Part shown: piece by piece, positions 41,806 through 64,000 of the stretch
How positions within the stretch are numbered: the stretch's first letter is position 1
Layout: the number at the start of each line of letters is the position of its first letter
Virus record (IMG/VR): IMGVR_UViG_3300032268_000986
Location: 1-64,000 of that record
Length of the DNA stretch: 64,000 nucleotides
Strand: one strand, 5' to 3'
Made by a program: the position numbers and the translations under genes
The notes under the pieces: generated by a model
Databases searched by the model: none
What the model saw: the letters and a program-made list of their open reading frames with translations, nothing else
Told to the model about the DNA's origin: nothing

Positions 41806-41955
41806 ATGTCAAACAGCAATTCTAAAACTCAACCACCTGCACAGCCAACCCAGCAGCCACGCAAGCCCAATGAAACCGGCACAATTTCGGTGCAGGCGCA
41901 CATGCGCATTTATGATCCAAAAACACAGAAAACATTTGTGGAGGGACGAGCATGA
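41806..41955 (+). CDS. Small 49-aa protein (not in ORF track)
   Basis: MSNSNSKTQPPAQPTQQPRKPNETGTISVQAHMRIYDPKTQKTFVEGRA; TAAATA 7 nt upstream; ATGA overlap with the next gene. Confidence 0.7.
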   Translation: MSNSNSKTQPPAQPTQQPRKPNETGTISVQAHMRIYDPKTQKTFVEGRA

Positions 41956-45409: not shown

Positions 45410-45715
45410 ATGGATACTGAAGCCTTGATTGCTCATTCACGAGCACGGTTTGATCACGCTACCGCTAAACGTGTGATGCGAGAAAAATATCAAGCCCGAA
45501 TGATATTTGCCCACAACGGCGGCATGTTTTGTGCAGGTCCTGCACTACAAGCCATGTTGTTGACCTGCCCCGATGCCACAGCCGTGATTGAAGACCTGTA
45601 TCAAAATCCTGTGCAAGTTGACACCAAGCAGTTGTTTGCACTGAGTCAACAACGATGGCAAGAACAAATGACTGCCTGGTTGGTAGAATACGAACAGGCT
45701 CAAAGCAAACGATGA
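45410..45715 (+). CDS. Conserved-looking phage hypothetical protein (101 aa)
   Basis: Probable start MDTEALI after the terminator and promoter; HNGGMF, IEDLYQNPV. Confidence 0.7.
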   Translation: MDTEALIAHSRARFDHATAKRVMREKYQARMIFAHNGGMFCAGPALQAMLLTCPDATAVIEDLYQNPVQVDTKQLFALSQQRWQEQMTAWLVEYEQAQSKR

Positions 45716-46518
45716 CCACTGGCGCACTGATATTTGCATTTGACAATGAACAAACTGATTATGTCTCCATGGCCGCCTGGTGCGCTGACAATGTGCATCG
45801 TCATCTTGGCATACCAGTTGCTGTGGTCACAGACTGTGATCCTGCCGATGTTCGACTCAAAAGTGTTGACAAAGTCATAACGGCTGCACCGGGTTCTGGG
45901 GGAACACGATACTTCGAAGACTATGACAAAACAGTCACATGGAACAACGCAGGTAGAGTTGATGCATACCGGTTGACGCCCTGGACTCGTACCTTGGTGC
46001 TGGATGCTGACTATGTGGTAGCAAGCTCAGAGCTTGGCCAGATCTTGGAATACAACACTGATTTTATGTGTCATAAAACTGCAATGAATATGAGTACCGG
46101 ATATCCGCTCAAGGGACTCAATGTGTTTGGTCGCTACGACATGCCCATGTGGTGGGCCACTGTGATGGTGTTTGGACAAAACAACACAGCACAATACATA
46201 TTTGATTGCATGCAAATGATCCGTGCCAACTGGGAACACTATCGAGCACTGTACGGCATTGACAAAAGCACCTATCGCAATGACTTTGCCCTGAGCATTG
46301 CAATAGGTATAGTGAGTGGACATGTTGGCAAAGTGGATGAAATACCTTGGCCTTTGATGAGTGTCATGCCTGATGCAACTCTGAGCAAAATTGACACAGA
46401 TGCCTACTGTATTACCTATCAAGATCTAGATACCAAACTAAAGCAAGTGACCTGGCACGGTACAGATTTTCATGCCATGGGCAAACGACATCTGGAGATG
46501 ATAATTGCGTCCCGTTGA
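45712..46518 (+). CDS. Glycosyltransferase-like protein (GT-A fold)
   Basis: GALIFAF, TPWTRTLVLDADY (DxD motif), RNDFALSIA; probable start MTTGA at 45712. Confidence 0.65.
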   Translation: MTTGALIFAFDNEQTDYVSMAAWCADNVHRHLGIPVAVVTDCDPADVRLKSVDKVITAAPGSGGTRYFEDYDKTVTWNNAGRVDAYRLTPWTRTLVLDADYVVASSELGQILEYNTDFMCHKTAMNMSTGYPLKGLNVFGRYDMPMWWATVMVFGQNNTAQYIFDCMQMIRANWEHYRALYGIDKSTYRNDFALSIAIGIVSGHVGKVDEIPWPLMSVMPDATLSKIDTDAYCITYQDLDTKLKQVTWHGTDFHAMGKRHLEMIIASR

Positions 46519-47284
46519 AGAACAAGGTTACGTCATACCAGCATTCAACACAGGCACTGTGGACTATGTGGATTGTGCTAGAACCTTGGCCAAAACACTG
46601 TTGTTGCACAATCCCAGTGCTAGAATCTGTTTGCTCACAAACGAACCCTATGCCGCAGACACACATCTGTTTGCCTATACTCACACCGTGGCAATCACCA
46701 CTGACAACATGTTTGCCAACGACTCATTGGTGTTTCACAACACACCATTCCGTGAAACAATCAAGCTAGAAGCAGACATGCTGATTGCTACACCCATTGA
46801 TCACTGGTGGACCATGTTTAGACATCAAGATGTTGTGATCAGCACAGGTTGCAGAAACTGGCACGGAGACATCTCCACAGCACGACACTACCGATCAGTG
46901 TTTGACCACAATCATTTACCAGATGTGTACAACGCCATAACATACTGGCGCCGGAGTACAACAGCCAAAGAGTTCTTTGATCTTGTGCGTGACATATTTG
47001 CCAACTGGGATCAATTCAAAACACTGTTGAAATATGCTCCAGACGTTCCCGACACAGACCTGGTGTATGCCATGGCAGCACAGATCATGGGCCCAGAACG
47101 TGTGACTCAGCCCTGGGCCGAGTACCCACAAATTGTGCATATGAAACGGCATCATGCAGGAACTCAAACTCAAGACTGGACACAGGAGCTGGTGTGGGAA
47201 ATGTATCCGTTACGAGTGCAAACTCAGGCACAGTGGGGTGCGTTTCACTACCATGTAAAAAGGTGGACCAATGAACTGGAATGA
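46505..47284 (+). CDS. Glycosyltransferase-like protein, paralog of the upstream gene
   Basis: DYVDCA, TPFRETIKLEADM, DTDLVYAMA, IVHMK, FHYHVK. Confidence 0.6.
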   Translation: MRPVEEQGYVIPAFNTGTVDYVDCARTLAKTLLLHNPSARICLLTNEPYAADTHLFAYTHTVAITTDNMFANDSLVFHNTPFRETIKLEADMLIATPIDHWWTMFRHQDVVISTGCRNWHGDISTARHYRSVFDHNHLPDVYNAITYWRRSTTAKEFFDLVRDIFANWDQFKTLLKYAPDVPDTDLVYAMAAQIMGPERVTQPWAEYPQIVHMKRHHAGTQTQDWTQELVWEMYPLRVQTQAQWGAFHYHVKRWTNELE

Positions 47285-47603
47285 TCTAATAGACATACAT
47301 GCAGCCATGCCAGGGCCTCAACCGGTATTTTATCGATTGTACTACGATGATCAAGGACACCCGCTATTCTACAGCATGGAGCATCGGCCTGGTAACTACA
47401 TTGAAATCACACAGGAACAGTATGCCAAAAACGCCAGCAACGTGCGTGTGCGTGATGGCAAACTGGTGCCAGTGACCTGGACCACTTCAGAAAAGATTGT
47501 ACCTGGAGACTCCGGAGTTGCCTGTGATCCACGGGATGTGGCTGTGGTAGTTGCACAGGAACCTTCAACCAAATGGAGCAAACGAACTTATGAAACAAAT
47601 TGA
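47271..47603 (+). CDS. Hypothetical protein
   Basis: 110-aa ORF overlapping both neighbours; FYRLYYD, YIEIT, VRVRDGKL. Confidence 0.65.
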   Translation: MNWNDLIDIHAAMPGPQPVFYRLYYDDQGHPLFYSMEHRPGNYIEITQEQYAKNASNVRVRDGKLVPVTWTTSEKIVPGDSGVACDPRDVAVVVAQEPSTKWSKRTYETN

Positions 47604-48513
47604 CGTTGCAGATCTAGACTGCATTTATCTCAGCTATGATGAACCCCAAAAAGAAGAATTCTGGGTCAAGATCAAAAACACAGTGCCCTGGGCCCGCAGA
47701 GTAGATGGCATCAAGGGATCAGACGCAGCACACAAGGCCGCGGCCGCTGCCAGTGAAACTGAACGATTCATTCTCATTGACGGCGACAACTTGCCAGACC
47801 CGGCATTTTTCAATCAGACACTGACATTTCCCACAGTGGACTATGAACAAGCTGTGTTTAGATGGCGTGCTCGCAACACCATCAATGGCCTGATGTACGG
47901 CAATGGTGGGCTCAGCTCATGGACACGGGAGTTTGTGATGAACATGAAAACACATGAAAACACCGACGGTCGCACAGAAACTGAAGTGGAGTTTTGTTTT
48001 GATCCCTTGTACTGGGCCATGCATGACTGCTATTCAAACACCTATCCCAATGGTTCAGCATTTCAGGCCTGGCGTGCTGGATTCCGTGAAGGTGTCAAGA
48101 TGTGTTTGCAACGAGGCCGCAAGCCCACTGTGGAAGAATTTAAAAATCAAGTGCTACGCAATCTTGATAACCTTACCATCTGGCACAACGTGGGCACAGA
48201 TGCGGAATACGGTGAGTGGGCCATTGCAGGCAGTCGCCAAGGCACATACATGACCATGCTCACAAGCTGGGACCATACTCAAGTGCAAGACTTTGACGCT
48301 TTGGCTGAATTGTGGTCAACTGTTGAAAATTCACAGCCCAGGATACTCAGCAATCAACTGGGCCCTGAATTGGGCGCACAACTGGACTTGCCCATGGCCA
48401 TTCTAGAAGCTGAACAGAGTGCATTTTTCAAGCATCACTATCGTGGCAACTGGCAGAATCGTGGCGTCATGACACGAGAAATTGATGTGATTAGACAGCA
48501 AGAAGGCTGGTAA
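47590..48513 (+). CDS. Glycosyltransferase family 2-like protein
   Basis: YLSYDEP, AHKAAA, FILIDGDN (DxD motif), AWRAGFREGVKM; probable start MKQID at 47590. Confidence 0.7.
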   Translation: MKQIDVADLDCIYLSYDEPQKEEFWVKIKNTVPWARRVDGIKGSDAAHKAAAAASETERFILIDGDNLPDPAFFNQTLTFPTVDYEQAVFRWRARNTINGLMYGNGGLSSWTREFVMNMKTHENTDGRTETEVEFCFDPLYWAMHDCYSNTYPNGSAFQAWRAGFREGVKMCLQRGRKPTVEEFKNQVLRNLDNLTIWHNVGTDAEYGEWAIAGSRQGTYMTMLTSWDHTQVQDFDALAELWSTVENSQPRILSNQLGPELGAQLDLPMAILEAEQSAFFKHHYRGNWQNRGVMTREIDVIRQQEGW

Positions 48514-49165
48514 ACTGTTGTGCTAGATACTGATGGGTTTTAATACCATAATGAAATCCATCACGTGCCCGATCCTGGATTGTGCAAGGTAACAGTAGAT
48601 TCTGCATAACTGGATATTCAACCTTACCTGGGTGCCAGTTGGGTATAAAGCTGTGTACTATTTTGCACGACTGTTTAGAGATTGATTCAAAATTCTGCTG
48701 CCAACTGGCATAGTTTTCTTGATCACTGTGTGTGGCTTCGCATAGTGTGCGTTCGTCATCGTGCCATGATGTATCTGCATGTTCTCGACGATGACTAAAC
48801 GTATAATGTATTACTATAGCCCATGGGGTAACCAGTTCAAGCACATCTGCTACTCGTCTGGCAATCCAATTGTTACTAGCACCGTTTAGACTGATGTTAA
48901 ATACCTTGCGGTTTAACTGTTGTTGCATTATATCACTAAACCGTTCTGACGCATTTACTCCCAGGCCTAGAGTAAAACTATCTCCAAATACAACAACAGA
49001 CTCTGAATCCAGTTCTCCTAACTCGTGTGTTCTAAATCCCAATGAGTTAAACTTATACTGAACCGTGCCGTATTGATCAAATCGTTTGCCAGCATACCGG
49101 GCACTGTCGAGTCCCAGTTCAGAGCACACTAGATTTGAATACCGAGGAATTATAATATTGTGCAT
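48491..49165 (-). CDS. SGNH/GDSL-fold protein (esterase or O-acyltransferase-like)
   Basis: NSLGFR, FGDSFTLG, NISLNGASN, RDGFHYG; probable start MHNII at 49165. Confidence 0.75.
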   Translation of the reverse strand: MHNIIIPRYSNLVCSELGLDSARYAGKRFDQYGTVQYKFNSLGFRTHELGELDSESVVVFGDSFTLGLGVNASERFSDIMQQQLNRKVFNISLNGASNNWIARRVADVLELVTPWAIVIHYTFSHRREHADTSWHDDERTLCEATHSDQENYASWQQNFESISKQSCKIVHSFIPNWHPGKVEYPVMQNLLLPCTIQDRARDGFHYGIKTHQYLAQQFTSLLAV

Positions 49166-49188
49166 AGAGTATCTATAAATATTTGCCA

Positions 49189-50274
49189 ATGAACGTCCTT
49201 ATACTTACTCCTGACCGTGTGGGTAGTACATTATTGCAGCGACTCATCACTGTATACGCTAATATAAACGAAAACCAAAGTCCTTTAACGGTTAACCTAC
49301 ACGAACTAACCAACGGGTTAGTAGAGTACCCCAACAAATGCTACAACCAGACCATGCTGGGCAAAAAGCCTGATGCCTGGGGATATCATCAAAGTTTAAG
49401 TACAGTTACGCAGATGTTGTCATCTGCCAAGCACGATGTAGTAAGCAGACTTGCACACTATCACATAAAGAATAGAAAAGATAGTTTAAGTGATCAGTTG
49501 AGCTTTTATCAGTGGCTCAACGAAAACTTTTATATCATTGCTGCTCGTCGAGAAAACTTGTTTGAACATGCCATGAGTTGGTGTATAGCAGCAGAAAGCA
49601 AAAAGCTCAATGTATACAGCTTTGAAGAAAAGTATAGCACCTTTGCAGAATTACAACAACACGGTCTTGACATACAACCTGATGTAATACACAAGTATCT
49701 CAATACCTATCAAGATTACATAACATGGGTAGAGTCGCATTTTACTGTAAATGCTTATTTTGAATACGAAAGAGACTTGCCCAATATTGAAAACTTTATC
49801 ACAGGACTCAGTTGCTTTAAAAAGTTCAAGAACCCACTCAAGTGGCAGGATCGTTTTGATATCAGCTGGACAGATTGGAACCGCATGCACTACCTGTTGA
49901 GTCTTGTGAGCTTCGACTACCAGTTCAGTGCCGAGGAAGACCAGTTCATGACAACCAACATTGATTTATACAGTGCTGCTAGAATACACATACAGGATCT
50001 CCAGGATCAGGGCATATTGGTTTCAGGTATCCCTATCAAATTGCACACACTCAAAGAAAAGGCCAGCCTAATTCACAACATTGATCAGTGTTTGTTGCAT
50101 TACAACAAATGGGTGAATACTATTCAACCACATTGTGGCTTGACGTATACTCCGCAACACCTGGAGCAAGTTGCATTATTAGAACACCATGCCTGGCGTG
50201 GTAATTCTGAAACTTTGCTCACATCAACTATTCCCGAAACTAAATTACTATCTTCAGACTTGAAGTTTTGTTAA
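49189..50274 (+). CDS. Sulfotransferase-like P-loop protein
   Basis: ILTPDRVGSTLL (5'-PSB-like), LHEL, RRENLFEHAMSW (3'-PB-like), FEYE; TATAAATA 7 nt before the ATG at 49189. Confidence 0.65.
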   Translation: MNVLILTPDRVGSTLLQRLITVYANINENQSPLTVNLHELTNGLVEYPNKCYNQTMLGKKPDAWGYHQSLSTVTQMLSSAKHDVVSRLAHYHIKNRKDSLSDQLSFYQWLNENFYIIAARRENLFEHAMSWCIAAESKKLNVYSFEEKYSTFAELQQHGLDIQPDVIHKYLNTYQDYITWVESHFTVNAYFEYERDLPNIENFITGLSCFKKFKNPLKWQDRFDISWTDWNRMHYLLSLVSFDYQFSAEEDQFMTTNIDLYSAARIHIQDLQDQGILVSGIPIKLHTLKEKASLIHNIDQCLLHYNKWVNTIQPHCGLTYTPQHLEQVALLEHHAWRGNSETLLTSTIPETKLLSSDLKFC

Positions 50275-50288
50275 TTCTATGTTATAAT
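50260..50288 (+). promoter_or_regulatory. Sigma70-like promoter, probably leaderless
   Basis: TTGAAG-N17-TATAAT with extended TG, 5 nt before ATG(50294). Confidence 0.6.
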
Positions 50289-50293
50289 ACTAT

Positions 50294-52222
50294 ATGATTA
50301 TTGCCTTTTATCCGGGCAGCGGCGGTAACCGCTACTACCAAATGCTCACAGGTACAACTGAATTTGATTCCGGTGTTACCTATGACCATTTATTAAAAAC
50401 ATCACAGCGTTTTCCTTATCGTTATCCCGACAAGAACAGTGTTCTGCCTGATCAACAGTTGATACTAACACACTGCATGAATGTACCGCTGCTCAAGCAG
50501 TTATGGCCAGGTCACGAAGTTCATGTTATTCTAGCAAACCGCACAGCAAGTATACGCAGAGAATGGGTGTTAGAAGGAAAACACAGAGAACACAACATGC
50601 CCGACCTTTTGGAAAACGCACTGGCTACCATAGGGCATCACGACAGATACTACCAAGAATACCCTGTAGATACCAACGGTGCAGACATTGTCGTGGATAT
50701 AGACACAGATCCCGGGACATTTGCCACAATGATGCAGGCTGAACTTGCCGCTTGCACAAGTGAAATATTTGATCAAGCAGCAGGTGAATACCGCCCCGGG
50801 GACCTACGCGATATACCTGGCGATCAAATGGTAGAAGGATTCAAAAGTAAGTTTTTAGACGACGCTGAAAAGATGCGTATGCGTTTGGATCAAGTTAGTC
50901 CCAGCATGTGTTTGGCCAAATGGAAACAAGTTAGCTTACACTTGCAAACAGGCATGAATAATAGCTGCTATCATCCTCCCTTACATGCAATTCCTATAGA
51001 TGCTATACAACGCAACCCTGGGTCACTGCATAACACACCCTACAAAAAAGAACAGCGCAAGATGATGCTCAACGGCGAAAAGCCCGCAGAATGCTCTTAC
51101 TGCTGGAACATGGAAGCTGAAGGCAAACTCAGTGATCGCCACTATAGATCAGCAGAGTCCTGGGCAGCACAAGATTTTGGTAAAATTATTAGTTCAGAGT
51201 ACTCTAATGACATTATTCCATCCTATGTAGAAGTTAACTTTAACAATGCTTGCAACCTCAAGTGCAGTTATTGCAGTCCTCAGTTCTCCAGCAGCTGGGC
51301 TGATGAAATCAGCCGCCATGGTGGGTATCCTACTTCAACTGTTCATAATTCCCCTGAGCATTTTTCCGGATCACGAAGGGTCATACCTGCCCGTGAACAC
51401 AATCCCTATGTTGAAGCGTTTTGGTCTTGGTGGCCAACACTATACCCCGAGCTCAAGCACTTTAGAATGACAGGTGGTGAGCCTTTGCTGGACAAAAACA
51501 CATACCGAGTTTTTGATTACGTACTAGAGCATCCCAAGCCAGACTTGCACTTGAATGTCACATCAAACTTTTCAGTAGACGAAAAGTCATGGCAGAAATA
51601 TCTAGGCTATGTGAAACGACTGTGTCAAGAAGGCAACCTAGAACACTTCATGCAGTATGTGAGCCTAGACGGCTGGGGCACTCAAGCAGAATACATGCGT
51701 CATGGCATGGACTTTGATCTAGTATGGGACAGAGTAAATCAATTTCTCACTGAAGTTCCCAGCTACAACAGCTTGACATTCATTGTCACAATGAACAACC
51801 TCAGTGTAACGTCACTGGAAAACTTATTTGCAGGCATCCTAGGACTTCGAAAAATACACAGTACCACATACCAACGTGTATGGTTTGATACTCCTGTGCT
51901 GCGTGAACCTGCTTGGCAAAGTCTGCAAATCTTGCCTGAACCCTATGCTGACCGCCTGGAACACTTGTGGGCCTGGATGATACGCCAGATAGAAACTCCT
52001 GAAGATCCATTTCATGGCTTCAAGGACTATGAACTGGCACGATTAGATCGTGACATTGCTTGGATGCGAGCTGGACAAAAACAAGACCATGCACAGGCCC
52101 GAGCCGACTTCTATCGTTTCTTCAGCGAACATGATCGTCGCCGCGGTACAGATTTTTTAAAAACATTTCCCGAAATGAGTGCTTGGTGGAACGAGTGTGC
52201 GTATCATGCTAGGAACACATAA
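50294..52222 (+). CDS. Radical SAM protein (N-terminal twitch-like domain) fused to a P-loop/sulfotransferase-like domain
   Basis: FYPGSGGN at the N-terminus; CLAKW..SCYHP..CSYCW; CNLKCSYC; TGGEP. Confidence 0.85.
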   Translation: MIIAFYPGSGGNRYYQMLTGTTEFDSGVTYDHLLKTSQRFPYRYPDKNSVLPDQQLILTHCMNVPLLKQLWPGHEVHVILANRTASIRREWVLEGKHREHNMPDLLENALATIGHHDRYYQEYPVDTNGADIVVDIDTDPGTFATMMQAELAACTSEIFDQAAGEYRPGDLRDIPGDQMVEGFKSKFLDDAEKMRMRLDQVSPSMCLAKWKQVSLHLQTGMNNSCYHPPLHAIPIDAIQRNPGSLHNTPYKKEQRKMMLNGEKPAECSYCWNMEAEGKLSDRHYRSAESWAAQDFGKIISSEYSNDIIPSYVEVNFNNACNLKCSYCSPQFSSSWADEISRHGGYPTSTVHNSPEHFSGSRRVIPAREHNPYVEAFWSWWPTLYPELKHFRMTGGEPLLDKNTYRVFDYVLEHPKPDLHLNVTSNFSVDEKSWQKYLGYVKRLCQEGNLEHFMQYVSLDGWGTQAEYMRHGMDFDLVWDRVNQFLTEVPSYNSLTFIVTMNNLSVTSLENLFAGILGLRKIHSTTYQRVWFDTPVLREPAWQSLQILPEPYADRLEHLWAWMIRQIETPEDPFHGFKDYELARLDRDIAWMRAGQKQDHAQARADFYRFFSEHDRRRGTDFLKTFPEMSAWWNECAYHARNT

Positions 52223-57655: not shown

Positions 57656-58641
57656 AAACACTGTTGTACGATAATCATACCAGTTTAGCATTGGACTGCT
57701 GTGCAGACCTGACTCAGCAGTATTTCAAAGTAGAACAGTATGATGCTGGCCGTGTGTATGATCCTGCTGATACCTTGGTAGTGATACCATTCTTTGGCGC
57801 AGGTGACTGGGCGTTTGACCTGCATGCTCAGGGATTTCGTGTGGCAGTAGATAATCTATGGGAACCCACCAGTCGCTATCTTGCCAGTCCAGGGTATGGC
57901 AAACTGGATCCTGATCGCACATTTGAAATTCACAGCGACTTGTGGTTTTGGTATTATGAATCCTGGAGCCTTTCTTATGCTCGAGCTCGCAATCAACATC
58001 TAGAGTACACACCACGCCGAACCTATAAAAAACTGGCGCTCATGCCCATGCGTCTTGAAAGAATGCATCGTGACTGGCTGTTTGACGCCATGACACCCTG
58101 GCTTGATGACTTCTACTACAGCTACCAAGCCAGGGGTATCAGTCTGCCCTGGGACCTGCCCTACGAAGATCCCACTGCACAACGCTACTATGATCCGCGT
58201 TGGTATGACGACACTTGGTTCAGCATAGTGGCCGAAAGCTATGTGGATGAAATGAATATCACAACATGGGGAACCAACCGCACGCCTTATCTAGGACCTT
58301 GGCCATTTATCACAGAAAAAACCTTTAAACCCATTGCGTTTCAACATCCATTTCAGGTTCTGGGTCATTCAGGCACCTTGGCTCGACTGCGTGAACTGGG
58401 GTTTGAAACATTTCCAGAAATGTTTGATGAATCATATGACCAGGCACCTACCGAACAAAAGAAATTGTCTATTTTGAAAAATAATGTCGCCAATTTTGAT
58501 CGCGGTGCCGGTGGTTACAGTCAACTAACACTGGATAAATTAACACACAACCACCAATTGTTTTTTGACTCTAAGAGAGTTGAGCAGGGTTTTTATCAAG
58601 ACATTATTGAACCACTATTGGCCTATGCAGAATCGACCTGA
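57652..58641 (+). CDS. Glycosyltransferase-like protein, paralog of 52206..53312
   Basis: SIVAES, ITEKTFKPI..HPF, GFETF..FDESYD. Confidence 0.55.
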   Translation: MKTLLYDNHTSLALDCCADLTQQYFKVEQYDAGRVYDPADTLVVIPFFGAGDWAFDLHAQGFRVAVDNLWEPTSRYLASPGYGKLDPDRTFEIHSDLWFWYYESWSLSYARARNQHLEYTPRRTYKKLALMPMRLERMHRDWLFDAMTPWLDDFYYSYQARGISLPWDLPYEDPTAQRYYDPRWYDDTWFSIVAESYVDEMNITTWGTNRTPYLGPWPFITEKTFKPIAFQHPFQVLGHSGTLARLRELGFETFPEMFDESYDQAPTEQKKLSILKNNVANFDRGAGGYSQLTLDKLTHNHQLFFDSKRVEQGFYQDIIEPLLAYAEST

Positions 58642-59920
58642 CACCATGTGCATGGCACCCTGGGTGCATACCTATCTTTCACCACAGACCGAACGGCGTT
58701 TGTGTTGTGCCAGCCGTGAGCCTGCACAGAATTTTCGTCAGTACATAGACACTGCTGCTGGCACCGGCCGGTATATTCCCATTACCTTGGATCAACACTG
58801 GAATTCCGACCACATGCAGAGTGTGCGTCGACGCATGATGGCCGGAGAAACTCTGCCTGAATGCGATGTATGCAACAGCAAATTGCTGAATACTTCAGTG
58901 TATCGAGACTATTTTTGGCATCTGTTCCAGCACAAATTACCCGAAGTGTATGACAGCACTGATGCCCAGGGCCGTACCACCATGCAACCAGTGTCATGGG
59001 ATTATCGCTTTAGTAATCTCTGCAATTTCAAATGTAGGACCTGTGGTGACATGCTAAGTAGTTCATGGGAAAGCGAGCAAAAGATCAACAACATGGTCAA
59101 TTGGAGCGACCCAAAAAACAACTGGATGCTGCCCCAGGTTCGACAACAAATCTCACAGTTCCAAGACAGTCAAATTGAACAAGAATTCAGTGACGCAGTG
59201 GAACAACACCGAGTGGAAGAGATTTACTGGGTAGGCGGTGAACCACTCATGTACGAACAGCACTGGCGGTACATGAAAAGAATCATTGAACTAGGAGACG
59301 GAAAAAATGTTTACGCTAGATATAACACAAACCTCAGTCGTGTTCATTATCGCAACACTGATCTTTATAGGGATCTGTTGGTTAACCTACGTGACTGGCA
59401 AATCTGCGCCAGCCTCGACGGAACAGGAGAAATCGGAGAATACATCCGCACAGGTCTGGAATATTCCACCTTTTTAAACAACTTTGAACAGGGTTTGACT
59501 ATACAAACAAATCCGCGTCAGATGCGCCTGGACTTTACACTCACATTGCCGGGCATGTTTGAAGTTGACCGCATGCAACAGCTGGCTCAGCAGTATGGGG
59601 TGGAACTCTTGGCCAAGGTGATATTCTCGTTTACCCCGGACATTGTGATGAGTCCCTTGGCCCTGCCACGTGAATTACTGGATGCCTGGGTAGACGAGCT
59701 GGTGCCCAACTGCACCAGCAATGCCATGCGTGATGTGCTGACACAGTTGAAAACCCGTCCCACGTTTGAACAACAGTGGCCAGACACGTATCGTGTGGCT
59801 CTTGCTCGTGGCCGCGATCGTGTGTTAAAATTAGAATCTATTCGTCCCGGCACTACAACCATGGAATCCATACTTGATGCCAGGCCAGAAATACGGAAAT
59901 GGTGGAATGAAATTGCTTGA
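58625..59920 (+). CDS. Radical SAM protein with N-terminal twitch-like domain
   Basis: CMAPW..LCC..CDVC; CNFKCRTC; VGGEP; probable start MQNRP at 58625. Confidence 0.9.
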   Translation: MQNRPDTMCMAPWVHTYLSPQTERRLCCASREPAQNFRQYIDTAAGTGRYIPITLDQHWNSDHMQSVRRRMMAGETLPECDVCNSKLLNTSVYRDYFWHLFQHKLPEVYDSTDAQGRTTMQPVSWDYRFSNLCNFKCRTCGDMLSSSWESEQKINNMVNWSDPKNNWMLPQVRQQISQFQDSQIEQEFSDAVEQHRVEEIYWVGGEPLMYEQHWRYMKRIIELGDGKNVYARYNTNLSRVHYRNTDLYRDLLVNLRDWQICASLDGTGEIGEYIRTGLEYSTFLNNFEQGLTIQTNPRQMRLDFTLTLPGMFEVDRMQQLAQQYGVELLAKVIFSFTPDIVMSPLALPRELLDAWVDELVPNCTSNAMRDVLTQLKTRPTFEQQWPDTYRVALARGRDRVLKLESIRPGTTTMESILDARPEIRKWWNEIA

Positions 59921-60956
59921 TGAATTCACAATTGAACTACGCAGTCGGCAAGACAACAGTCAGTTAACCCTCTATGTCAATGTAGATGACAACAGCTTGA
60001 GCCGTAAATGGCTCACGGCCTTGAATCACCTGGTGAGCAACAACTACCATTTGGAAAAGAACTATTGTTTTTTTGGATTCCCCGACAGTGATCGCAACAA
60101 AGAATACCTGTGTGAACAGATCAATGCATCAATTGCAGCCATCAATGCCTCGGCACTCACATACAAAATAAATGATCATTTCACTGTGGACAACACAGTG
60201 CAGCCGGACACAGGCAAATTGATTCATGACCGATTGAATCAATTGCACTGTTATTTTGAAGATCTGCAGGGAGTGTCGGGCCGCATGAGTCCCCACTATC
60301 AGTCAGCTGATGATGTCACACGCTGGCACATTCGACAATTAAATTTGCTGTGTCACGAATATGAAAGTCTGATCTTGAGCCAACGCAAGAGTTGGCAAGC
60401 GCCAGAATGGATCAGACCCAGCCAGCTGATGTGCTGGCTCAATGCGCCGAGATTTGAACTGGACTCTGCAGACTACGAACTGTTTGGAGTGGACACCATA
60501 TCTCGGGGCACTGGACAGGTGTTTGTGGGTGTGAACAAAGCAGTGGGCAAGCATCACTGGGAAGTGTTCAATGATGAAGGCAGAGACAGCCGCATAGATG
60601 AACTCACCACGTCCACACTGAAAACTCAAACCGAAGCCGCTGGCGATTTTGACATTGAGTGGGGTCAAGACCCTGCTCCCTATGAATTTCAGCAGACAAA
60701 ACTGGCAGACTTTAGAACATGGCTGCGAGCCAATGGATTTGACCCTGAGGATCCCACACTCACAATTGGCCATCCCAGAGTGGCACAAGTGGATCTCCAG
60801 CGCAGTTTTGGTACCTTGGAATATCGCAAGATCTGGGATCAGTTGGAGCATCACATGGATGTGTATAAAATACGTACCAGTGACGCTCGAGCTACATATG
60901 AGTATCGCTGGAGCGATGCTGATTATGCTGCAAGGCAAATAAAGGAATTGAAATGA
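59907..60956 (+). CDS. Hypothetical protein (His/Glu motifs LNQLHCYFE and LNLLCHEYE; possibly metal-binding)
   Basis: Long ORF overlapping both neighbours; probable start MKLLD at 59907. Confidence 0.65.
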   Translation: MKLLDEFTIELRSRQDNSQLTLYVNVDDNSLSRKWLTALNHLVSNNYHLEKNYCFFGFPDSDRNKEYLCEQINASIAAINASALTYKINDHFTVDNTVQPDTGKLIHDRLNQLHCYFEDLQGVSGRMSPHYQSADDVTRWHIRQLNLLCHEYESLILSQRKSWQAPEWIRPSQLMCWLNAPRFELDSADYELFGVDTISRGTGQVFVGVNKAVGKHHWEVFNDEGRDSRIDELTTSTLKTQTEAAGDFDIEWGQDPAPYEFQQTKLADFRTWLRANGFDPEDPTLTIGHPRVAQVDLQRSFGTLEYRKIWDQLEHHMDVYKIRTSDARATYEYRWSDADYAARQIKELK

Positions 60957-61054
60957 ATTGGATCAAACGAATCTACAACAGAATTGTCATGGAAATACGC
61001 TATCGTAAAAAGCTAAAAGAGCTGCGCAAACGAGATCCCTTTATCTACAAATGA
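60953..61054 (+). CDS. 33-aa basic peptide ending RDPFIYK (not in ORF track)
   Basis: MNWIKRIYNRIVMEIRYRKKLKELRKRDPFIYK; AAGGA RBS; ATGA overlaps at both ends. Confidence 0.75.
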   Translation: MNWIKRIYNRIVMEIRYRKKLKELRKRDPFIYK

Positions 61055-62526
61055 ATATACTGGGAATTAGTGCAGGCTTTCATGATGCAGCCGCTACTGT
61101 GATTTCACCCGACGGTGAGATTTTGTTTGCCGGCCATTCAGAGCGTTACAGCAAAAAGAAAAACGACTCAGATATTTCCGTGGCGTTGCTGAACGAAATA
61201 GACATGAGTCAAATTGACACCATTGCATACTATGAACGTCCCTGGGTCAAACAACTGCGTCAATTGTACGCAGGTCAGGGCATTGAGTGGCACAAACTCA
61301 CCACACGGCAAATACTACAAGCACAGCTGGGCCGCCGCAGAGTTTCTGGACGCACATTAAAGAACTACAATCACCATCAGTGTCATGCTGCTGCGGGATT
61401 TCAGACCAGCCCCCATCAACGGGCCACAGTGGTGGTGATTGATGCCATTGGCGAATTAGATACCATAAGCATCTGGGGCGCACAATATGTCAACGGCCGT
61501 GCTGTGTATAAACAACTGTGGCGACAGCGATATCCACACTCAATTGGCTTGTTTTATTCGGCAGCCACGGCCAGTGTTGGCCTGCGACCCTTGGACGAAG
61601 AATACATCTTGATGGGCATGGCCGCATACGGTGACGCCGCACAAGCCATCGGCATGCATGCTCTGGTAAAAGACACTGACAAAATTGAATTTAGTGAAAA
61701 CCTACATGCTGGAATAGACCCCAAGTACCTGCAGGATCTAGAGGAATTTGACATTGCTGCCGGAGCACAGTCCATGGCAGAGTGTCTGATCTATTCAGTT
61801 GTGCGCAGAGCAAAGGACTTTGGTTGGAGCGACAACTTGGTGTACATGGGCGGTGTTGCTCTCAACTGCTCGGCCAATCGCAATTTGGGGAAATACTTTG
61901 ATAACATTTGGATTATGCCTTGTCCCGGCGATGCTGGTAGTAGCCTGGGTGCGGCAGCACTTGCACATGGCCAACAGATACATTGGACCAATGCCTATCT
62001 GGGCACAGATATCCCTGGTGCTTATCCTGTCAACGACATTGTGGACGGTCTGCTACATGATCAAATTGTGGGTGTGGCCTCGGGTCGTGCCGAGTTTGGA
62101 CCCAGGGCTCTGGGCAACAGAAGTTTGCTCGCAGACCCCAGAGGCAGCGAGATCAAGGGGAAAGTAAATGCAATCAAACGCAGACAACAATTTAGACCAT
62201 TTGCGCCGGTTATTCTGGAAGAGCTGGCTGATCAGTACTTTGATATGCCTAGGGGTTTCGGTCACAGTAGGTATATGCAGTCAGTCGCTCGTTGCCGGCA
62301 TCCTGACCTATTTCCTGCTGTCATTCATCATGACGGTACTAGTCGTGTACAAACTGTACCCCAGGATGGATCGGGAATTAGACAACTTTTGGAAAAGTGG
62401 TATGCCTTGACCGGTTGTCCCATGTTGCTCAACACCAGTTTGAACATACGTGGCGAGCCCATGGTCAATGACCGATCAGACGCTGACAGATTTGAAATGC
62501 TGTACGGTGTGCGAGTTTGCAGTTGA
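61051..62526 (+). CDS. Carbamoyltransferase (NodU/CmcH/TobZ family)
   Basis: ILGISAGFHDAAA, HHQCHAA, IDAIGE, GGVALNC, EFGPRALGNRS, FRPFAP, LLNTSLN. Confidence 0.95.
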   Translation: MNILGISAGFHDAAATVISPDGEILFAGHSERYSKKKNDSDISVALLNEIDMSQIDTIAYYERPWVKQLRQLYAGQGIEWHKLTTRQILQAQLGRRRVSGRTLKNYNHHQCHAAAGFQTSPHQRATVVVIDAIGELDTISIWGAQYVNGRAVYKQLWRQRYPHSIGLFYSAATASVGLRPLDEEYILMGMAAYGDAAQAIGMHALVKDTDKIEFSENLHAGIDPKYLQDLEEFDIAAGAQSMAECLIYSVVRRAKDFGWSDNLVYMGGVALNCSANRNLGKYFDNIWIMPCPGDAGSSLGAAALAHGQQIHWTNAYLGTDIPGAYPVNDIVDGLLHDQIVGVASGRAEFGPRALGNRSLLADPRGSEIKGKVNAIKRRQQFRPFAPVILEELADQYFDMPRGFGHSRYMQSVARCRHPDLFPAVIHHDGTSRVQTVPQDGSGIRQLLEKWYALTGCPMLLNTSLNIRGEPMVNDRSDADRFEMLYGVRVCS

Positions 62527-62527
62527 A

Positions 62528-63142
62528 ATGTCAAGAATATACATCACTGGCGACAGTTTTTGTGCCTATCGTACAGATCCAGATCAACATTGGCCGGCTA
62601 GACTAGCAAAAAATCTTGGACTAACATTAGAGGGTCGCGGCTATCCTGGTCAAGGTTGGTGGCCTTCCTGTCAGGATTTCAATTGGTACATAGGGTCAAG
62701 GAAATTTTCAGAAACATCAGTGTTTGTATTTTGCCATACAGACTTAAATCGCCCAATAACCAATAATGAGTATTGCAAATTGGGTCTGACAAAAGAACAG
62801 CAAGAGTTTTATTTTAGATATCTCCATGACCCTGCTGTTAACCAATGGTCCGCTAACAAATGGTATCGAGAGATTGCTACATCATTGATCAACAAAACTG
62901 TGTTGCATTTGCATTTTGGTAGCAGTAATCAGAGATTGAGATCTCAACTGCCTGGCAAGCATCTAACACCAGAACTTGTGACCATGACATCATGGTTCAG
63001 CAACGGCAACACAGGACTGTTGCAGATGCATGAAGGGTACCCAAACCATTTTACTCCCAAAGTCAATGCCAAATTGGCTGACCTTATAGCTGCCAAATGG
63101 CAGCACAATGTCATTGACATTGCCAAGAGTGAGTTAGAATAA
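62528..63142 (+). CDS. SGNH-fold protein
   Basis: ITGDSFC, W...LA..LG, PNHFT; probable start MSRIY at 62528. Confidence 0.65.
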   Translation: MSRIYITGDSFCAYRTDPDQHWPARLAKNLGLTLEGRGYPGQGWWPSCQDFNWYIGSRKFSETSVFVFCHTDLNRPITNNEYCKLGLTKEQQEFYFRYLHDPAVNQWSANKWYREIATSLINKTVLHLHFGSSNQRLRSQLPGKHLTPELVTMTSWFSNGNTGLLQMHEGYPNHFTPKVNAKLADLIAAKWQHNVIDIAKSELE

Positions 63143-63175
63143 TAAATATCTTTATTGCAAGGAATAAAGGTATGT

Positions 63176-64000
63176 TCAGAGGTAACTTTCTAGCCCACCG
63201 CGTCGACGAATGTCTTGTGTGCAGCATGAGATGCCACCGTCCCAGAAATAGCTGTGACGCAGTTCTGAGATGATGGGTTCAATGCCGTGTCTGCGACAGT
63301 AGTCAAACACCTGTTTGTTGTAGGCTGAGAAAATCACATGTGATTCGTCCAGCACAAGACAATTGACATCAAACACAGTTTCAGCCACAAAGCCAGTCCA
63401 GTTCTTGAGATAGGTGTTCACAAAGTCAGTGAACTCAGGTGTGGGTGTTTGTCCTTGCACGTACCATGCCCCAGGATTGTTTTCATACTTGAACTTGCCC
63501 ACTTCCATAGCAGCCCAGATTGAACTGTCCCATACCTTGCACACATCCCAGCCCGGGAAGTCGGCAGCAAGGTCCAGATTTACATCATGCTTGCTGCTCA
63601 ACAACACACCGGGTTTTAGGATAGCAAACACAGCATCGCCGTGTCCGTCTGTGATGGCTTCGTGTATGCGATATTCAGCACCCAGCACATTGTCCACGAT
63701 CCAACGTGTTTGATCCGGGCGCAAAAAATCTGAGTTGTCAAAGAACACATCACGACCCACTCGCACAATGCATGATGCCGACGCACCATTTAGGATGCAG
63801 TTCTCATCCCAGCCTGTGGCACCGTGTGGATTGATCACACTGCCCGGCTGTGCTGCTGCATACTCGGCACAGAGTGAATCAAGTTCCTGCATGGGCAACA
63901 CACGCAACAATTTATCGCCCAGTGTGATCTGCCAGTCTCTTGGTGTGAGTGGCGGCAGTGGAGCACCACTGCCGTTTATTTGTCCTTGAATGAATTGATC
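63176..64000 (-). CDS. Amidinotransferase (glycine/inosamine-phosphate amidinotransferase family), 5'-truncated by the window edge
   Basis: PRD, GHGDAVF, FDVNCL, WDGGISCCTQDIRR; the frame stays open from 63910 to the window end. Confidence 0.85.
   Translation of the reverse strand, partial: DQFIQGQINGSGAPLPPLTPRDWQITLGDKLLRVLPMQELDSLCAEYAAAQPGSVINPHGATGWDENCILNGASASCIVRVGRDVFFDNSDFLRPDQTRWIVDNVLGAEYRIHEAITDGHGDAVFAILKPGVLLSSKHDVNLDLAADFPGWDVCKVWDSSIWAAMEVGKFKYENNPGAWYVQGQTPTPEFTDFVNTYLKNWTGFVAETVFDVNCLVLDESHVIFSAYNKQVFDYCRRHGIEPIISELRHSYFWDGGISCCTQDIRRRGGLESYL

What the first reader, a model, noticed from the sequence alone, without database searches (positions are those of the whole stretch)
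45410..64000. ~18.5-kb phage-encoded glycan synthesis and tailoring cluster beside the tail-fibre genes
Seen: about five glycosyltransferase-like genes, three SGNH proteins, one or two sulfotransferase-like domains, five radical SAM enzymes, a NodU/CmcH carbamoyltransferase and an amidinotransferase. Most have overlapping start/stop codons, and the cluster begins right after the Ser/Thr/Asn-rich fibre genes. Established: twitch radical SAMs (BtrN, NeoN) oxidise or epimerise sugars; TobZ/NodU carbamoylate sugars; StrB1-type enzymes amidinate aminocyclitols; SGNH proteins add or remove O-acyl groups. Inference: the phage builds a heavily decorated glycan, most simply on virion proteins. Alternatives are the host envelope (superinfection exclusion) or DNA. 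No base-hydroxymethylase gene was seen in this window.
Basis: partly seen in the sequence, partly recalled or inferred. Interest (0 to 1): 0.75.

Follow-up and report, generated by a model that had tools for sequence, protein, structure and literature searches.

The report
Jumbo-phage glycan-building gene cluster beside fibres
A 343-kb uncultured jumbo phage carries, right after its baseplate and fibre genes, a conserved block of sugar-transferring and sugar-tailoring enzymes, including five copies of an uncharacterised radical SAM family. The block most likely builds a decorated glycan, but what that glycan is attached to is still unproven.

Summary
Window 45.6-64 kb encodes five glycosyltransferase-like proteins, five radical SAM enzymes, an O-carbamoyltransferase, an amidinotransferase and at least two SGNH-like proteins. 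Most of the genes overlap, and they follow the baseplate/fibre module. The sulfotransferase call and the third SGNH call could not be confirmed.

The block runs on to about 73.4 kb: two more GT-B genes, a 1456-aa protein with a GT-A-like end, an SDR, a DegT aminotransferase and a PIG-L deacetylase.

All five radical SAMs belong to NCBIfam NF033640, whose twitch domain is N-terminal, so they are not BtrN/NeoN relatives. The genome holds ten copies.

In Bacteroidota genomes the same family sits in tandem inside glycoconjugate-type clusters. This ties it to glycan chemistry by association.

The core is present in all 51 related loci with full flanks. A sub-module (GT-A1, GT-A2, small protein, GT-A3, radical SAM) lies in the same place after the baseplate genes in the cultured Ralstonia phage RsoM2USA.

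No cluster protein has a membrane segment. The genome lacks ThyA-type hydroxymethylase, TGT/DpdA, C5-methylase and a deoxy-inosose synthase. DNA and aminocyclitol targets are therefore disfavoured.

Virion-protein glycosylation is the best reading, at about 0.45. Host-envelope remodelling is the main rival.

The parts
27414..41786 (+). 4790-aa baseplate/fibre-associated virion protein. Context and candidate acceptor.
   Evidence: PHROGs phrog_10938 virion structural protein 6e-298 and phrog_677 baseplate wedge tail fibre connector 2e-17.
41952..42557 (+). Conserved baseplate protein of Rak2/Atu_ph07-type jumbo phages.
   Evidence: phrog_11259 2e-65. tblastn gives 43-52% identity to 93 jumbo phage records, one of them annotated as a baseplate protein.
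42588..44375 (+). 595-aa fibre protein with Gly/Thr/Asn-rich repeats shared with at least 7 other fibre-like genes of the genome.
   Evidence: phrog_14394 virion structural protein at the N-terminus. Paralog hits. Composition.
44389..45354 (+). 321-aa Thr-rich (22%) fibre-like protein directly upstream of the first GT. Candidate acceptor.
   Evidence: Composition. Found upstream of the cluster wherever the flank reaches, 29 of 51 loci. Alignment A9.
45655..46518 (+). GT-A1: GT-A (GT8-like) nucleotide-sugar transferase-like protein. The likely start is at 45712.
   Evidence: Atlas look-alikes are named nucleotide-diphospho-sugar transferase. Weak glycogenin hits to profile A7. Paralog of 46505 at hhalign probability 98.5%. 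Ortholog in RsoM2USA gene 353.
46505..47284 (+). GT-A2: paralog of GT-A1.
   Evidence: phrog_1903 2e-10. hhalign. RsoM2USA gene 352.
47271..47603 (+). Conserved 110-aa protein of unknown function.
   Evidence: Present in 45 of 51 loci at 54% median identity. No family match.
47551..48513 (+). GT-A3: putative GT2-like transferase with a DGD motif. The same domain ends the 1456-aa protein at genome 66449-70819.
   Evidence: Atlas automatic name. HMM hit to the 1456-aa protein at 1.5e-40. RsoM2USA genes 350 and 348. No Pfam or PDB match.
48491..49189 (-). Accessory SGNH-like esterase/acyltransferase.
   Evidence: Pfam Lipase_GDSL 1e-4, below cut-off. hhalign probability 95% to 55870. Its HMM hits SGNH-bearing bacterial proteins. 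Present in only 6 of 51 loci.
49183..50274 (+). Accessory 363-aa protein. The sulfotransferase call is unconfirmed.
   Evidence: No Pfam or PDB match for it or for 29 relatives. 229 relatives among 1.84 billion representatives. Present in 5 of 51 loci.
50294..52222 (+). Radical SAM 1: an unknown 200-aa N-terminal domain followed by an N_Twi_rSAM.
   Evidence: NF033640 4e-98 over residues 202-631. Closest to the RsoM2USA gene 349 product, 37% identity.
52179..53312 (+). GT-B fold glycosyltransferase-like protein (TEK-motif family, 9 paralogs in the genome).
   Evidence: AF2 pLDDT 81. VIA Z 12-13 to FucT 2nzw, T4 BGT, SenB and TarM. Family HMM hits.
53299..54624 (+). Radical SAM 2 (N_Twi_rSAM).
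   Evidence: NF033640 6e-87.
54611..55873 (+). Radical SAM 3 (N_Twi_rSAM), the best conserved.
   Evidence: NF033640 5e-117. Pfam SPASM at residues 32-97 lies before Radical_SAM at 135-266. 77-89% identity in 80 loci.
55870..56454 (+). Accessory SGNH-like protein with Ser9, Asp169 and His172 invariant.
   Evidence: Pfam Lipase_GDSL_2 0.014 over the full length. A4 invariants. Its HMM hits proteins next to radical SAMs in Bacteroidota clusters at 3e-13.
56438..57655 (+). Radical SAM 4 (N_Twi_rSAM).
   Evidence: NF033640 4e-100.
57652..58641 (+). GT-B fold paralog in a highly variable slot.
   Evidence: Member of family A1. Only 33% median identity, detected in 20 of 51 loci.
58565..59920 (+). 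Radical SAM 5 (N_Twi_rSAM).
   Evidence: NF033640 6e-83.
59907..60956 (+). Conserved 349-aa protein of unknown function, with a beta-barrel and a helical insert.
   Evidence: Present in 51 of 51 loci. AF2 pLDDT 86. No Foldseek PDB match. AFDB matches only uncharacterised proteins, TM 0.78. Weak cyclophilin-like Z of about 8.
61051..62526 (+). O-carbamoyltransferase of the NodU/CmcH/TobZ superfamily.
   Evidence: Pfam Carbam_trans_N 4e-35 and Carbam_trans_C 2e-47. PDB NovN 2e-51, GdmN 1e-45, TobZ 1e-36. Present in 51 of 51 loci.
62450..63142 (+). Accessory 230-aa protein. The SGNH call is unconfirmed.
   Evidence: A GDS motif is seen by eye. hhalign probability is only 18%. Present in 5 of 51 loci.
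63176..64000 (-). Amidinotransferase. The gene ends at genome position 64219, beyond the window.
   Evidence: PDB AGAT 2e-14, HsvA 5e-13, StrB1 1e-11, SxtG 2e-10. The active-site Cys and the His-x-Asp motif align. Three paralogs lie elsewhere in the genome.

Best explanation
The block is a phage-encoded, entirely soluble glycosylation and glycan-tailoring line.

Proposed route:
1. The phage draws on host nucleotide-sugars and reshapes some of them with an SDR epimerase/dehydratase, a DegT aminotransferase and a PIG-L deacetylase encoded just beyond the window.
2. Three GT-A-like and several GT-B-fold transferases assemble an oligosaccharide on a cytoplasmic acceptor. The acceptor is most likely the Thr-rich fibre or baseplate proteins encoded immediately upstream, before or during virion assembly.
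3. The glycan is then tailored by O-carbamoylation and amidination of an amino group.
4. In some strains it is also O-acylated or de-acylated by SGNH proteins.
5. Five N-terminal-twitch radical SAM enzymes add radical-mediated changes. Their reaction type is unknown; oxidation, epimerisation or C-C chemistry on a sugar is the inference.
6. Strain-to-strain replacement of the GT-B genes and of the accessory cassettes varies the glycan.

Shown: the enzyme families, their conservation and synteny, the absence of membrane segments, and the genomic association of the radical SAM family with glycan genes in bacteria.

Inferred: the acceptor, the order of the steps and every substrate.
For: - Enzyme identities.
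- Extension with SDR, DegT and PIG-L.
- No NTP_transferase in the genome, so the phage depends on host sugar nucleotides.
- No hydrophobic segment of transmembrane type in all but two cluster proteins. The two exceptions are single internal stretches within soluble-type domains.
- Same strand as the baseplate/fibre genes and directly downstream of them.
- Order kept in 51 of 51 related loci.
- The sub-module GT-A1, GT-A2, small protein, GT-A3, radical SAM sits in the same place after hub, wedge, giant protein and a mass-spectrometry-confirmed structural protein in Ralstonia phage RsoM2USA, at only 32-37% identity: and PMC8504454.
- GT-B slots are 33-44% identical while radical SAMs are 71-84% identical in the same loci. 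This pattern is typical of exposed glycans.
- N_Twi_rSAM genes in Bacteroidota lie among GT2, GT4, SDR, DegT, UDP-sugar dehydrogenase, SGNH and carbamoyltransferase genes.
- Phage SGNH profiles hit the partners in those clusters.
- Published precedent for virion glycosylation by phage GTs: Freeman et al. 2023, as cited in PMC12619734.
Against: - No glycan or acceptor has been observed.
- The predicted-complex test of GT-A1 with the 321-aa fibre protein gave no answer.
- About 25 further genes of these families are scattered through the genome next to non-structural genes.
- In Vibrio phage K566 four N_Twi_rSAM genes are not beside structural genes. Adjacency to fibres is therefore not a general property of the family.
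- Bacterial relatives sit with UbiA, ABC-2 transporter and GT-C genes, which points to lipid-linked, exported products.
- GT-A3 and the GT-A1/2 pair lack any significant match to a characterised transferase.
Confidence: 0.45

Rival explanations
1. Host-envelope remodelling. The soluble phage enzymes feed into the host's own lipid-carrier and export machinery. During the long infection they change the cell-surface polysaccharide. This would block superinfection or stop progeny from sticking to debris.
For: - Bacterial homologues of the radical SAM, SGNH and carbamoyltransferase set lie in clusters with UbiA, ABC-2 transporter, PMT_2 (GT-C) and GT4 genes.
- The phage has no nucleotidyltransferase and so depends on host sugar metabolism.
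- This is the published reading of polysaccharide clusters in jumbo cyanophages (PMC7824862).
- Variable GTs also fit surface-antigen variation.
Against: - No initiating phosphoglycosyl transferase, flippase, polymerase or any polytopic membrane protein lies in or next to the cluster.
- The cluster is core, syntenic with late structural genes, and conserved in a distant phage of a different host phylum.
- The one MAG that carries these phage contigs has no cellular N_Twi_rSAM cluster for the phage enzymes to plug into.
Confidence: 0.25
2. Sugar-derived small molecule. The enzymes make a soluble, aminoglycoside-like or other decorated oligosaccharide metabolite, not a glycoconjugate.
For: - The enzyme set recalls aminoglycoside and other sugar-antibiotic pathways: amidinotransferase (StrB1, SxtG relatives), O-carbamoyltransferase (TobZ, NovN, GdmN relatives), DegT, a PIG-L deacetylase and radical SAMs.
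- A secondary-metabolite reading has been proposed for carbamoyltransferase clusters of jumbo cyanophages (PMC7824862).
Against: - No DHQ-synthase-like deoxy-inosose synthase in the genome.
- No exporter or self-resistance gene in the cluster.
- At least 13 GT-like genes in the genome point to an oligo- or polysaccharide.
- Position inside the structural gene block.
Confidence: 0.12
3. DNA hypermodification. The transferases and tailoring enzymes decorate bases of the phage genome to evade restriction.
For: - The GT-B model aligns with T4 beta- and alpha-glucosyltransferases and the phage HY126 GT at Z 11.5-12.7, no better than with many other GT-B enzymes.
- ThyX lies about 2 kb past the end of the extended cluster.
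Against: - No ThyA-family dNMP hydroxymethylase, no TGT/DpdA and no C5 DNA methylase in a 99%-complete genome, each with valid positive controls.
- No Tet/JBP hit either, but that control did not ring, so the result is uninformative.
- The cluster sits in the late structural block, not with replication genes.
Confidence: 0.07
4. Radical SAM enzymes act on protein. The N-terminal-twitch enzymes modify residues of a fibre protein or a small peptide (epimerisation, cross-links or oxidation), as SPASM/twitch maturases do. The GTs then glycosylate the same protein.
For: - Weak secondary NCBIfam hits to peptide maturases such as StsB, PapB and YhhB, all far below cut-off.
- Closeness to the fibre genes.
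- A conserved 110-aa protein of unknown role lies in the module.
Against: - No RiPP recognition element or precursor-like peptide was detected.
- The fibre proteins have almost no Cys, 0-0.6%.
- Bacterial contexts are sugar-type, not RiPP-type.
Confidence: 0.08

Closest known systems
Virion glycosylation of mycobacteriophages (Freeman et al. 2023, as cited in PMC12619734)
   Same: Phage-encoded soluble glycosyltransferases lie next to the structural genes whose Ser/Thr-rich products they would decorate. The proposed role is a surface glycan on the particle.
   Different: There, one to a few GTs act on the capsid and tail tube. Here there are at least 7 GT-like genes in the block and at least 13 in the genome, plus amidino-, carbamoyl-, SGNH- and radical-SAM tailoring, beside baseplate/fibre genes. 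Glycosylation is not demonstrated here.
Glycosylation machinery of giant viruses (Mimivirus fibrils, chlorovirus capsid; own knowledge)
   Same: A virus-encoded, host-independent, cytoplasmic set of SDR dehydratases, aminotransferases and many GTs builds unusual glycans on virion surface fibres.
   Different: Those are eukaryotic viruses. No N-terminal-twitch radical SAMs, amidinotransferases or carbamoyltransferases are described there. No sequence relationship was tested here.
Polysaccharide and carbamoyltransferase gene clusters of jumbo cyanophages (Iyer et al. 2021, PMC7824862)
   Same: Variable sets of GTs and sugar-modifying enzymes, including carbamoyltransferases, occur in large phage genomes. 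That paper already raised both the superinfection-exclusion and the secondary-metabolite readings.
   Different: Those clusters carry nucleotidyltransferases, sugar kinases, halogenase and 2OG dioxygenases and are sporadic. This one is core to its clade, fixed beside the fibre genes, and built around five radical SAM paralogs.
Uncharacterised Bacteroidota clusters with tandem N_Twi_rSAM genes (L101, L105, L106, L107)
   Same: They share the radical SAM family at up to 41% identity, in 2-3 tandem copies, together with SGNH-like partners, carbamoyltransferase, SDR, DegT and GTs.
   Different: The bacterial clusters add PhyH/WelO5 oxygenases, UbiA, an ABC transporter and GT-C, which are membrane and export parts the phage lacks. 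They have no GT-A1/2/3, no TEK-type GT-B and no amidinotransferase detectable by profile search.
BtrN / NeoN-type twitch radical SAM enzymes of aminoglycoside pathways
   Same: They belong to the radical SAM superfamily, carry an auxiliary Fe-S (twitch) domain, and have a proposed sugar substrate.
   Different: The twitch domain is N-terminal here instead of C-terminal. No detectable sequence match to any solved radical SAM. No aminocyclitol synthase in the genome.

Membership tests
NCBIfam NF033640 (N_Twi_rSAM, N-terminal twitch radical SAM) | Full-length match above the curated cut-off of 170 bits | tested here: met
   279-391 bits for all five genes. Ten genes in the genome are over the cut-off.
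NCBIfam NF033640 (N_Twi_rSAM, N-terminal twitch radical SAM) | CxxxCxxC SAM-cluster motif, with the Cys-rich auxiliary domain placed before the core | tested here: met
   C140, C144 and C147 are invariant, as are C32, C93 and C96, in 8 paralogs (A2). Pfam SPASM at residues 32-97 precedes Radical_SAM at 135-266.
BtrN/NeoN-type sugar radical SAM dehydrogenase or epimerase | Sequence relationship to BtrN and a C-terminal twitch domain | tested here: not met
   No PDB chain matches at E<=1. The auxiliary domain is N-terminal.
BtrN/NeoN-type sugar radical SAM dehydrogenase or epimerase | Oxidises or epimerises an amino-sugar or aminocyclitol | not testable with these tools
   Needs an enzyme assay. 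The only evidence is the association with sugar genes.
NodU/CmcH/TobZ O-carbamoyltransferases | Both Carbam_trans_N and Carbam_trans_C domains above cut-off, and homology to solved members | tested here: met
   122.5 and 161.7 bits. NovN 2e-51 and TobZ 1e-36.
NodU/CmcH/TobZ O-carbamoyltransferases | Orthology to NodU itself (NCBIfam NF041651, cut-off 1000 bits) | tested here: not met
   126.8 bits. It is a superfamily member, not NodU.
Amidinotransferases (AGAT/StrB1 type) | Homology over the fold, with the C-terminal active-site Cys and the His-x-Asp segment | tested here: met
   AGAT 2e-14 and StrB1 1e-11. The alignment puts Cys on the AGAT catalytic Cys and keeps His and Asp in the 'H-x-D-A' segment.
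Amidinotransferases (AGAT/StrB1 type) | Acceptor is an aminocyclitol phosphate, as for StrB1 | tested here: not met
   No DHQ-synthase-like cyclitol synthase in the genome. The acceptor is unknown.
GT-B fold glycosyltransferases | Two Rossmann-like domains with a conserved acidic/basic motif in the C-terminal domain | tested here: met
   AF2 pLDDT 81 and pTM 0.84. Z 12-13 over 270-285 residues to many GT-B enzymes. E259, E271, K272 and K275 are invariant.
GT-B fold glycosyltransferases | Assignment to a sequence family (Pfam/CAZy-type) | tested here: not met
   No Pfam hit at E<=10. No PDB hit with profile A1. The resemblance of the TEK motif to GT10 fucosyltransferases is my reading only.
GT-A fold glycosyltransferases (45655, 46505, 47551) | Significant match to a GT-A family, and a DxD motif | tested here: inconclusive
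   Atlas names only. Glycogenin E 0.2-0.5. A118 and D119 are invariant in A7. No Pfam match. No structure model was made.
SGNH hydrolases | Block I Ser and block V DxxH, and a match to GDSL models | tested here: inconclusive
   55870: S9, D169 and H172 invariant, Pfam 0.014, below cut-off. 48491: Pfam 1e-4, below cut-off. Both hit SGNH-annotated bacterial proteins. 62450 is not supported.
Sulfotransferases (49183-50274) | Homology to a sulfotransferase family or fold | tested here: not met
   No Pfam hit in 29 relatives. No PDB hit with profiles A5 or A8. Only a P-loop-like 'PDxVGST' motif and an 'RRxN..S' motif, seen by eye.
Phage virion glycosylation systems | GT genes adjacent to the structural gene that is modified | tested here: met
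   The same arrangement is found in RsoM2USA.
Phage virion glycosylation systems | Glycan covalently bound to a virion protein | not testable with these tools
   Needs glycoproteomics. The complex prediction gave no answer.
Phage DNA glycosylation (T4-type or TET-type) | A route to a hydroxymethylated base (ThyA-family hydroxymethylase, or C5-methylase plus TET) | tested here: not met
   PF00303 and PF00145 are absent with working controls. PF12851 is absent but its control was silent.
Envelope polysaccharide (O-antigen/CPS) gene clusters | Membrane-bound initiating transferase and a flippase, ABC exporter or polymerase | tested here: not met
   No multi-span protein in 41.9-75 kb. The only polytopic proteins elsewhere are TctA and a Bax-inhibitor homologue.
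2-deoxystreptamine or streptidine aminoglycoside clusters | Cyclitol-forming enzyme (DHQ-synthase-like) | tested here: not met
   PF01761 is absent from the genome, and the control rang in 11 of 14 genomes.

The most novel reading that the evidence does not exclude
An abundant clade of freshwater jumbo phages, and the cultured Ralstonia phage RsoM2USA, mature their baseplate fibres with a virus-encoded glycan factory. Its hallmark is a phage-expanded, uncharacterised family of N-terminal-twitch radical SAM enzymes that carry out new radical chemistry on sugars. The glycan would also be amidinated and carbamoylated. Swapping of the GT-B genes would vary the glycan and so tune adsorption or shield the fibres.
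Probability: 0.3. Interest if true: 0.85.

Novelty: new variant of a known kind. Interest (0 to 1): 0.68.

Why it matters
- **Scale.** If the glycan is on the virion, this would be by far the most elaborate glycosylation system known in a bacteriophage. About 40 genes, roughly 13% of the genome, belong to these families. That approaches what giant eukaryotic viruses do.
- **Adsorption and decay.** It would add a non-protein layer to how phage fibres recognise hosts or resist decay.
- **A function for an orphan family.** It gives a concrete setting for NF033640. That radical SAM family has no known function and was found in only 3-4 of 301 sampled Bacteroidota genomes. It has 10 copies in this phage and several in other large phages.
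- **Testable now.** A cultured phage, RsoM2USA, carries the minimal module (three GT-A-like genes and one radical SAM) in the same position.
- **Abundance.** The clade is very common in metagenomes: more than 7,700 close homologues of one radical SAM were found.

Tried and rejected
- **Pfam, PHROGs and NCBIfam on every ORF of the block.** The GT-like, SGNH-like and 'sulfotransferase' proteins got no significant Pfam family. Profiles and folds had to be used instead.
- **Profile-to-PDB searches.** The searches for the GT-B family (A1), SGNH (A4), 49183 (A5, A8) and GT-A3 (A6) found nothing meaningful.
- **49183 as a sulfotransferase.** A full representative search found 229 relatives. A Pfam scan of 29 of them gave nothing. 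The call was rejected as unproven.
- **50294 N-terminal domain against 49183.** No similarity.
- **59874-60956.** The model is confident, but there is no Foldseek PDB match and only a weak cyclophilin-like Z of about 8. Function is left unknown.
- **Apparent in-frame stops in orthologues.** All lie within the first 50 or the last few codons of my extended ORFs, and only two sit mid-gene. They come from my start-finding script and are not evidence of recoding.
- **Promoter/terminator scan of 44-64 kb.** Counts equal those in shuffles, so co-transcription with the fibre genes could not be tested.
- **'Relatives' search.** Not possible for a virus record.
- **Moraphage paper (PMC12619734).** It describes a different lineage (up to 307 kb, no radical SAM mentioned) and is not this clade.
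- **Complex prediction, GT-A1 with the 321-aa fibre protein.** No answer.
- **Aminoglycoside-like pathway.** Considered because of the enzyme set, and rejected as the lead reading for lack of a cyclitol synthase.

Full report
**Setting.** The window is bases 1-64000 of a 342,865-bp IMG/VR phage record estimated to be 99% complete. A conserved baseplate protein (41952-42557) is 43-52% identical to proteins of Atu_ph07, 121Q, PBECO4 and about 90 other jumbo myoviruses.
- PHROGs identify 20494-22008 as baseplate hub, 23529-23912 and 23968-27414 as wedge subunits, and the 4790-aa ORF 27414-41786 as a virion/baseplate-fibre protein.
- Next come a 595-aa fibre protein and a 321-aa protein with 22% Thr and 10% Ser.
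- Everything from 14753 to 63142 is on the plus strand, except one accessory gene.

**Checking the observation.** From 45655 onward, 11 of 17 gene junctions overlap.
- All five radical SAM genes are solid. Each matches NCBIfam NF033640, 'twitch domain-containing radical SAM protein' (N_Twi_rSAM), at 279-391 bits against a cut-off of 170.
- Pfam shows the unusual order: the SPASM/twitch domain lies before the radical SAM core.
- The CxxxCxxC motif and three auxiliary cysteines are invariant in eight paralogs.
- The carbamoyltransferase has both Pfam domains and matches solved NovN, GdmN and TobZ.
- The minus-strand gene 63176-64219 is an amidinotransferase: AGAT 2e-14, HsvA, StrB1 and SxtG, with the active-site Cys and His-x-Asp aligned.

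**Glycosyltransferase-like genes.**
- A family of four paralogs is linked by BLAST: 52179, 57652 and, beyond the window, 64203(-) and 65359(-).
- It has no Pfam or PDB sequence match.
- An AlphaFold model built from 20 sequences (pLDDT 81) aligns over both domains with GT-B glycosyltransferases at Z 12-13. Matches include alpha-1,3-fucosyltransferase, T4 BGT, SenB and TarM.
- 45655 and 46505 are paralogs (hhalign 98.5%). Their Atlas look-alikes are named nucleotide-diphospho-sugar transferases, and they give only sub-threshold glycogenin hits.
- 47551 rests on an automatic 'GT2-like' name and a DGD motif. The same domain ends a 1456-aa protein at 66449-70819.

**SGNH and sulfotransferase calls.**
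- Two SGNH-like proteins, 48491(-) and 55870, are supported by conserved Ser and DxxH residues, by below-cut-off Pfam hits, by homology to each other and by hits to SGNH-annotated bacterial proteins.
- The third SGNH call (62450) is unconfirmed.
- The sulfotransferase call (49183) is also unconfirmed. A family of 229 relatives has no Pfam or PDB match.
- 59874-60956 is conserved everywhere, folds confidently and matches nothing characterised.

**True extent.**
- The block continues beyond the window: two GT-B genes, the 1456-aa protein, an SDR epimerase/dehydratase, a DegT aminotransferase and a PIG-L deacetylase, up to about 73.4 kb. One more SGNH-like gene follows, and then ThyX.
- Genome-wide there are 10 N_Twi_rSAM genes, 9 GT-B paralogs, 4 amidinotransferases and 7 SGNH-like genes.
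- There is also a B12-radical SAM, an asparagine-synthase-like amidotransferase, a GDP-mannose-dehydratase-like SDR and a GT4.

**Conservation.**
- 223 viral contigs encode a 77-89% identical copy of radical SAM 3, and the large protein database holds more than 7,700 homologues.
- In the 51 loci with full 10-kb flanks, the five radical SAMs, 59874 and the carbamoyltransferase are present in all, in the same order.
- The GT-A genes are in 39-49 of these loci. The Thr-rich protein is upstream wherever the flank reaches.
- The SGNH genes and 49183 are accessory, present in 5-6 loci.
- Radical SAMs are 71-84% identical, but the two GT-B slots are only 44% and 33% identical. So the tailoring core is conserved and the transferases vary.

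**A cultured relative.**
- Among 50,697 GenBank phage records, only Ralstonia phage RsoM2USA has GT-A1 and GT-A3 homologues.
- Its genes 353-348 are GT-A1, GT-A2, a small ORF, GT-A3, an N_Twi_rSAM and a second GT-A3-like protein.
- They follow hub (364), wedge (363, 362), a 2541-aa structural protein (361), sheath (359) and structural protein 356, which was confirmed by mass spectrometry (PMC8504454). They also follow gene 355, whose N-terminus resembles that of the 595-aa fibre protein.
- The linkage to the baseplate/fibre block therefore survives at 32-37% protein identity.
- It is not universal. Vibrio phage K566 has four N_Twi_rSAM genes among non-structural genes.

**What the radical SAM family is associated with.**
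- A Saprospiraceae genome has three tandem copies (41% identity) beside GT2, DegT, SDR, two PhyH dioxygenases and UbiA.
- In other Bacteroidota contigs the tandem copies sit with several kinds of gene:
  - oxygenases: PhyH/WelO5;
  - a UbiA-GT4-SGNH fusion;
  - a carbamoyltransferase;
  - sugar enzymes: SDR, UDP-sugar dehydrogenase, DegT and GT32-like genes;
  - membrane and export parts: PMT_2 and ABC-2 transporter genes.
- One Chromatiales copy is isolated.
- The phage SGNH profiles hit the proteins next to those radical SAMs.
- The family is rare in cells, 3-4 of 301 sampled Bacteroidota genomes.
- This is guilt by association for glycan chemistry, not proof of the reaction.

**Which target?**
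- No protein from 41.9 to 75 kb has a transmembrane-type profile. The genome lacks a nucleotidyltransferase. The enzymes therefore act in the cytoplasm on host-made sugar nucleotides.
- DNA is disfavoured: no ThyA-family hydroxymethylase, TGT/DpdA or C5 methylase. The Tet/JBP search was uninformative.
- An aminocyclitol product is disfavoured: no DHQ-synthase-like enzyme.
- Two readings remain: glycosylation of virion proteins, or feeding host envelope pathways.
- Conserved placement behind the fibre genes, the lack of any export part and the variable GTs favour the virion, at about 0.45.
- The bacterial contexts and the published reading of cyanophage clusters (PMC7824862) keep envelope remodelling at about 0.25.
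- A predicted-complex test of GT-A1 with the Thr-rich protein gave no answer.

**Host hint.** Two contigs carrying this cluster are binned in a Haliscomenobacter MAG. This may reflect the host or a binning artefact.

**Verdict.** 'Decorated glycan' is well supported, the acceptor is open, and the BtrN/NeoN and StrB1 analogies do not hold at the level of family membership. I found no paper describing this module.

Noticed in passing
window 1-123: The record begins with a perfect 18-nt tandem repeat (6.8 copies, 100% match). Bases 1-2000 also have an unusual AT skew of -0.35.
   Followed up: partly
window 27414-41786: A single 4790-aa ORF matches a virion structural family, a baseplate-wedge/fibre connector and a hub/lysozyme-like segment. 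Its RsoM2USA counterpart is a 2541-aa virion protein confirmed by mass spectrometry.
   Followed up: partly
genome G000:C1 226263-305861 (outside the window): Five further N_Twi_rSAM genes (226263, 266929, 282554, 298008, 304719) lie away from the cluster, among mostly unannotated genes. Their neighbours were not examined in detail.
   Followed up: partly
genome G000:C1 112036-133563 (outside the window): A second loose group of sugar genes: three GT-B paralogs, an asparagine-synthase-like amidotransferase, a B12-binding radical SAM, an amidinotransferase, a GDP-mannose-dehydratase-like SDR and another radical SAM. They are interspersed with a Bax-inhibitor homologue and a 5'-3' exonuclease.
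   Followed up: partly
L099 and L100 (NZ_JBBAKG010000001.1 and ...003.1): Two contigs, 183 kb and 148 kb, of a 'Haliscomenobacter sp.' MAG each carry the five-radical-SAM cluster at 83-84% identity. They are evidently two jumbo-phage contigs binned with the bacterium. This is a possible host clue or a binning artefact.
   Followed up: partly
L105 1-21386 (Fluviicola-type contig) and L106, L108: A recurrent, apparently undescribed Bacteroidota cluster. It has 2-3 tandem N_Twi_rSAM genes, 3-5 PhyH dioxygenases, a WelO5-like enzyme, a UbiA-GT4-SGNH fusion, a carbamoyltransferase with DUF5989, a methyltransferase and an ABC transporter.
   Followed up: no
window 48491-50274: The minus-strand SGNH-like gene and the adjacent 363-aa gene occur together in largely the same few relatives (L005, L019, L020, L033, L046, L078). 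They look like a two-gene accessory cassette inserted between GT-A3 and the first radical SAM.
   Followed up: partly
window 50294-50900: The first radical SAM carries an extra N-terminal domain of about 200 aa, starting with a 'PGSGGN' P-loop-like motif. It has no detectable relatives or similarity to 49183.
   Followed up: partly
L102 13965-20701 (Vibrio phage K566): Four N_Twi_rSAM genes are interleaved with 310-420-aa hypothetical proteins in a 255-kb Vibrio phage. The layout echoes this cluster, but the interleaved proteins show no BLAST similarity to those here.
   Followed up: partly
genome G000:C1 102054-103355, 227530-228123, 234845-235945 (outside the window): The phage also encodes a TctA-family transporter subunit, a ClpP protease and a UvdE UV endonuclease.
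   Followed up: no
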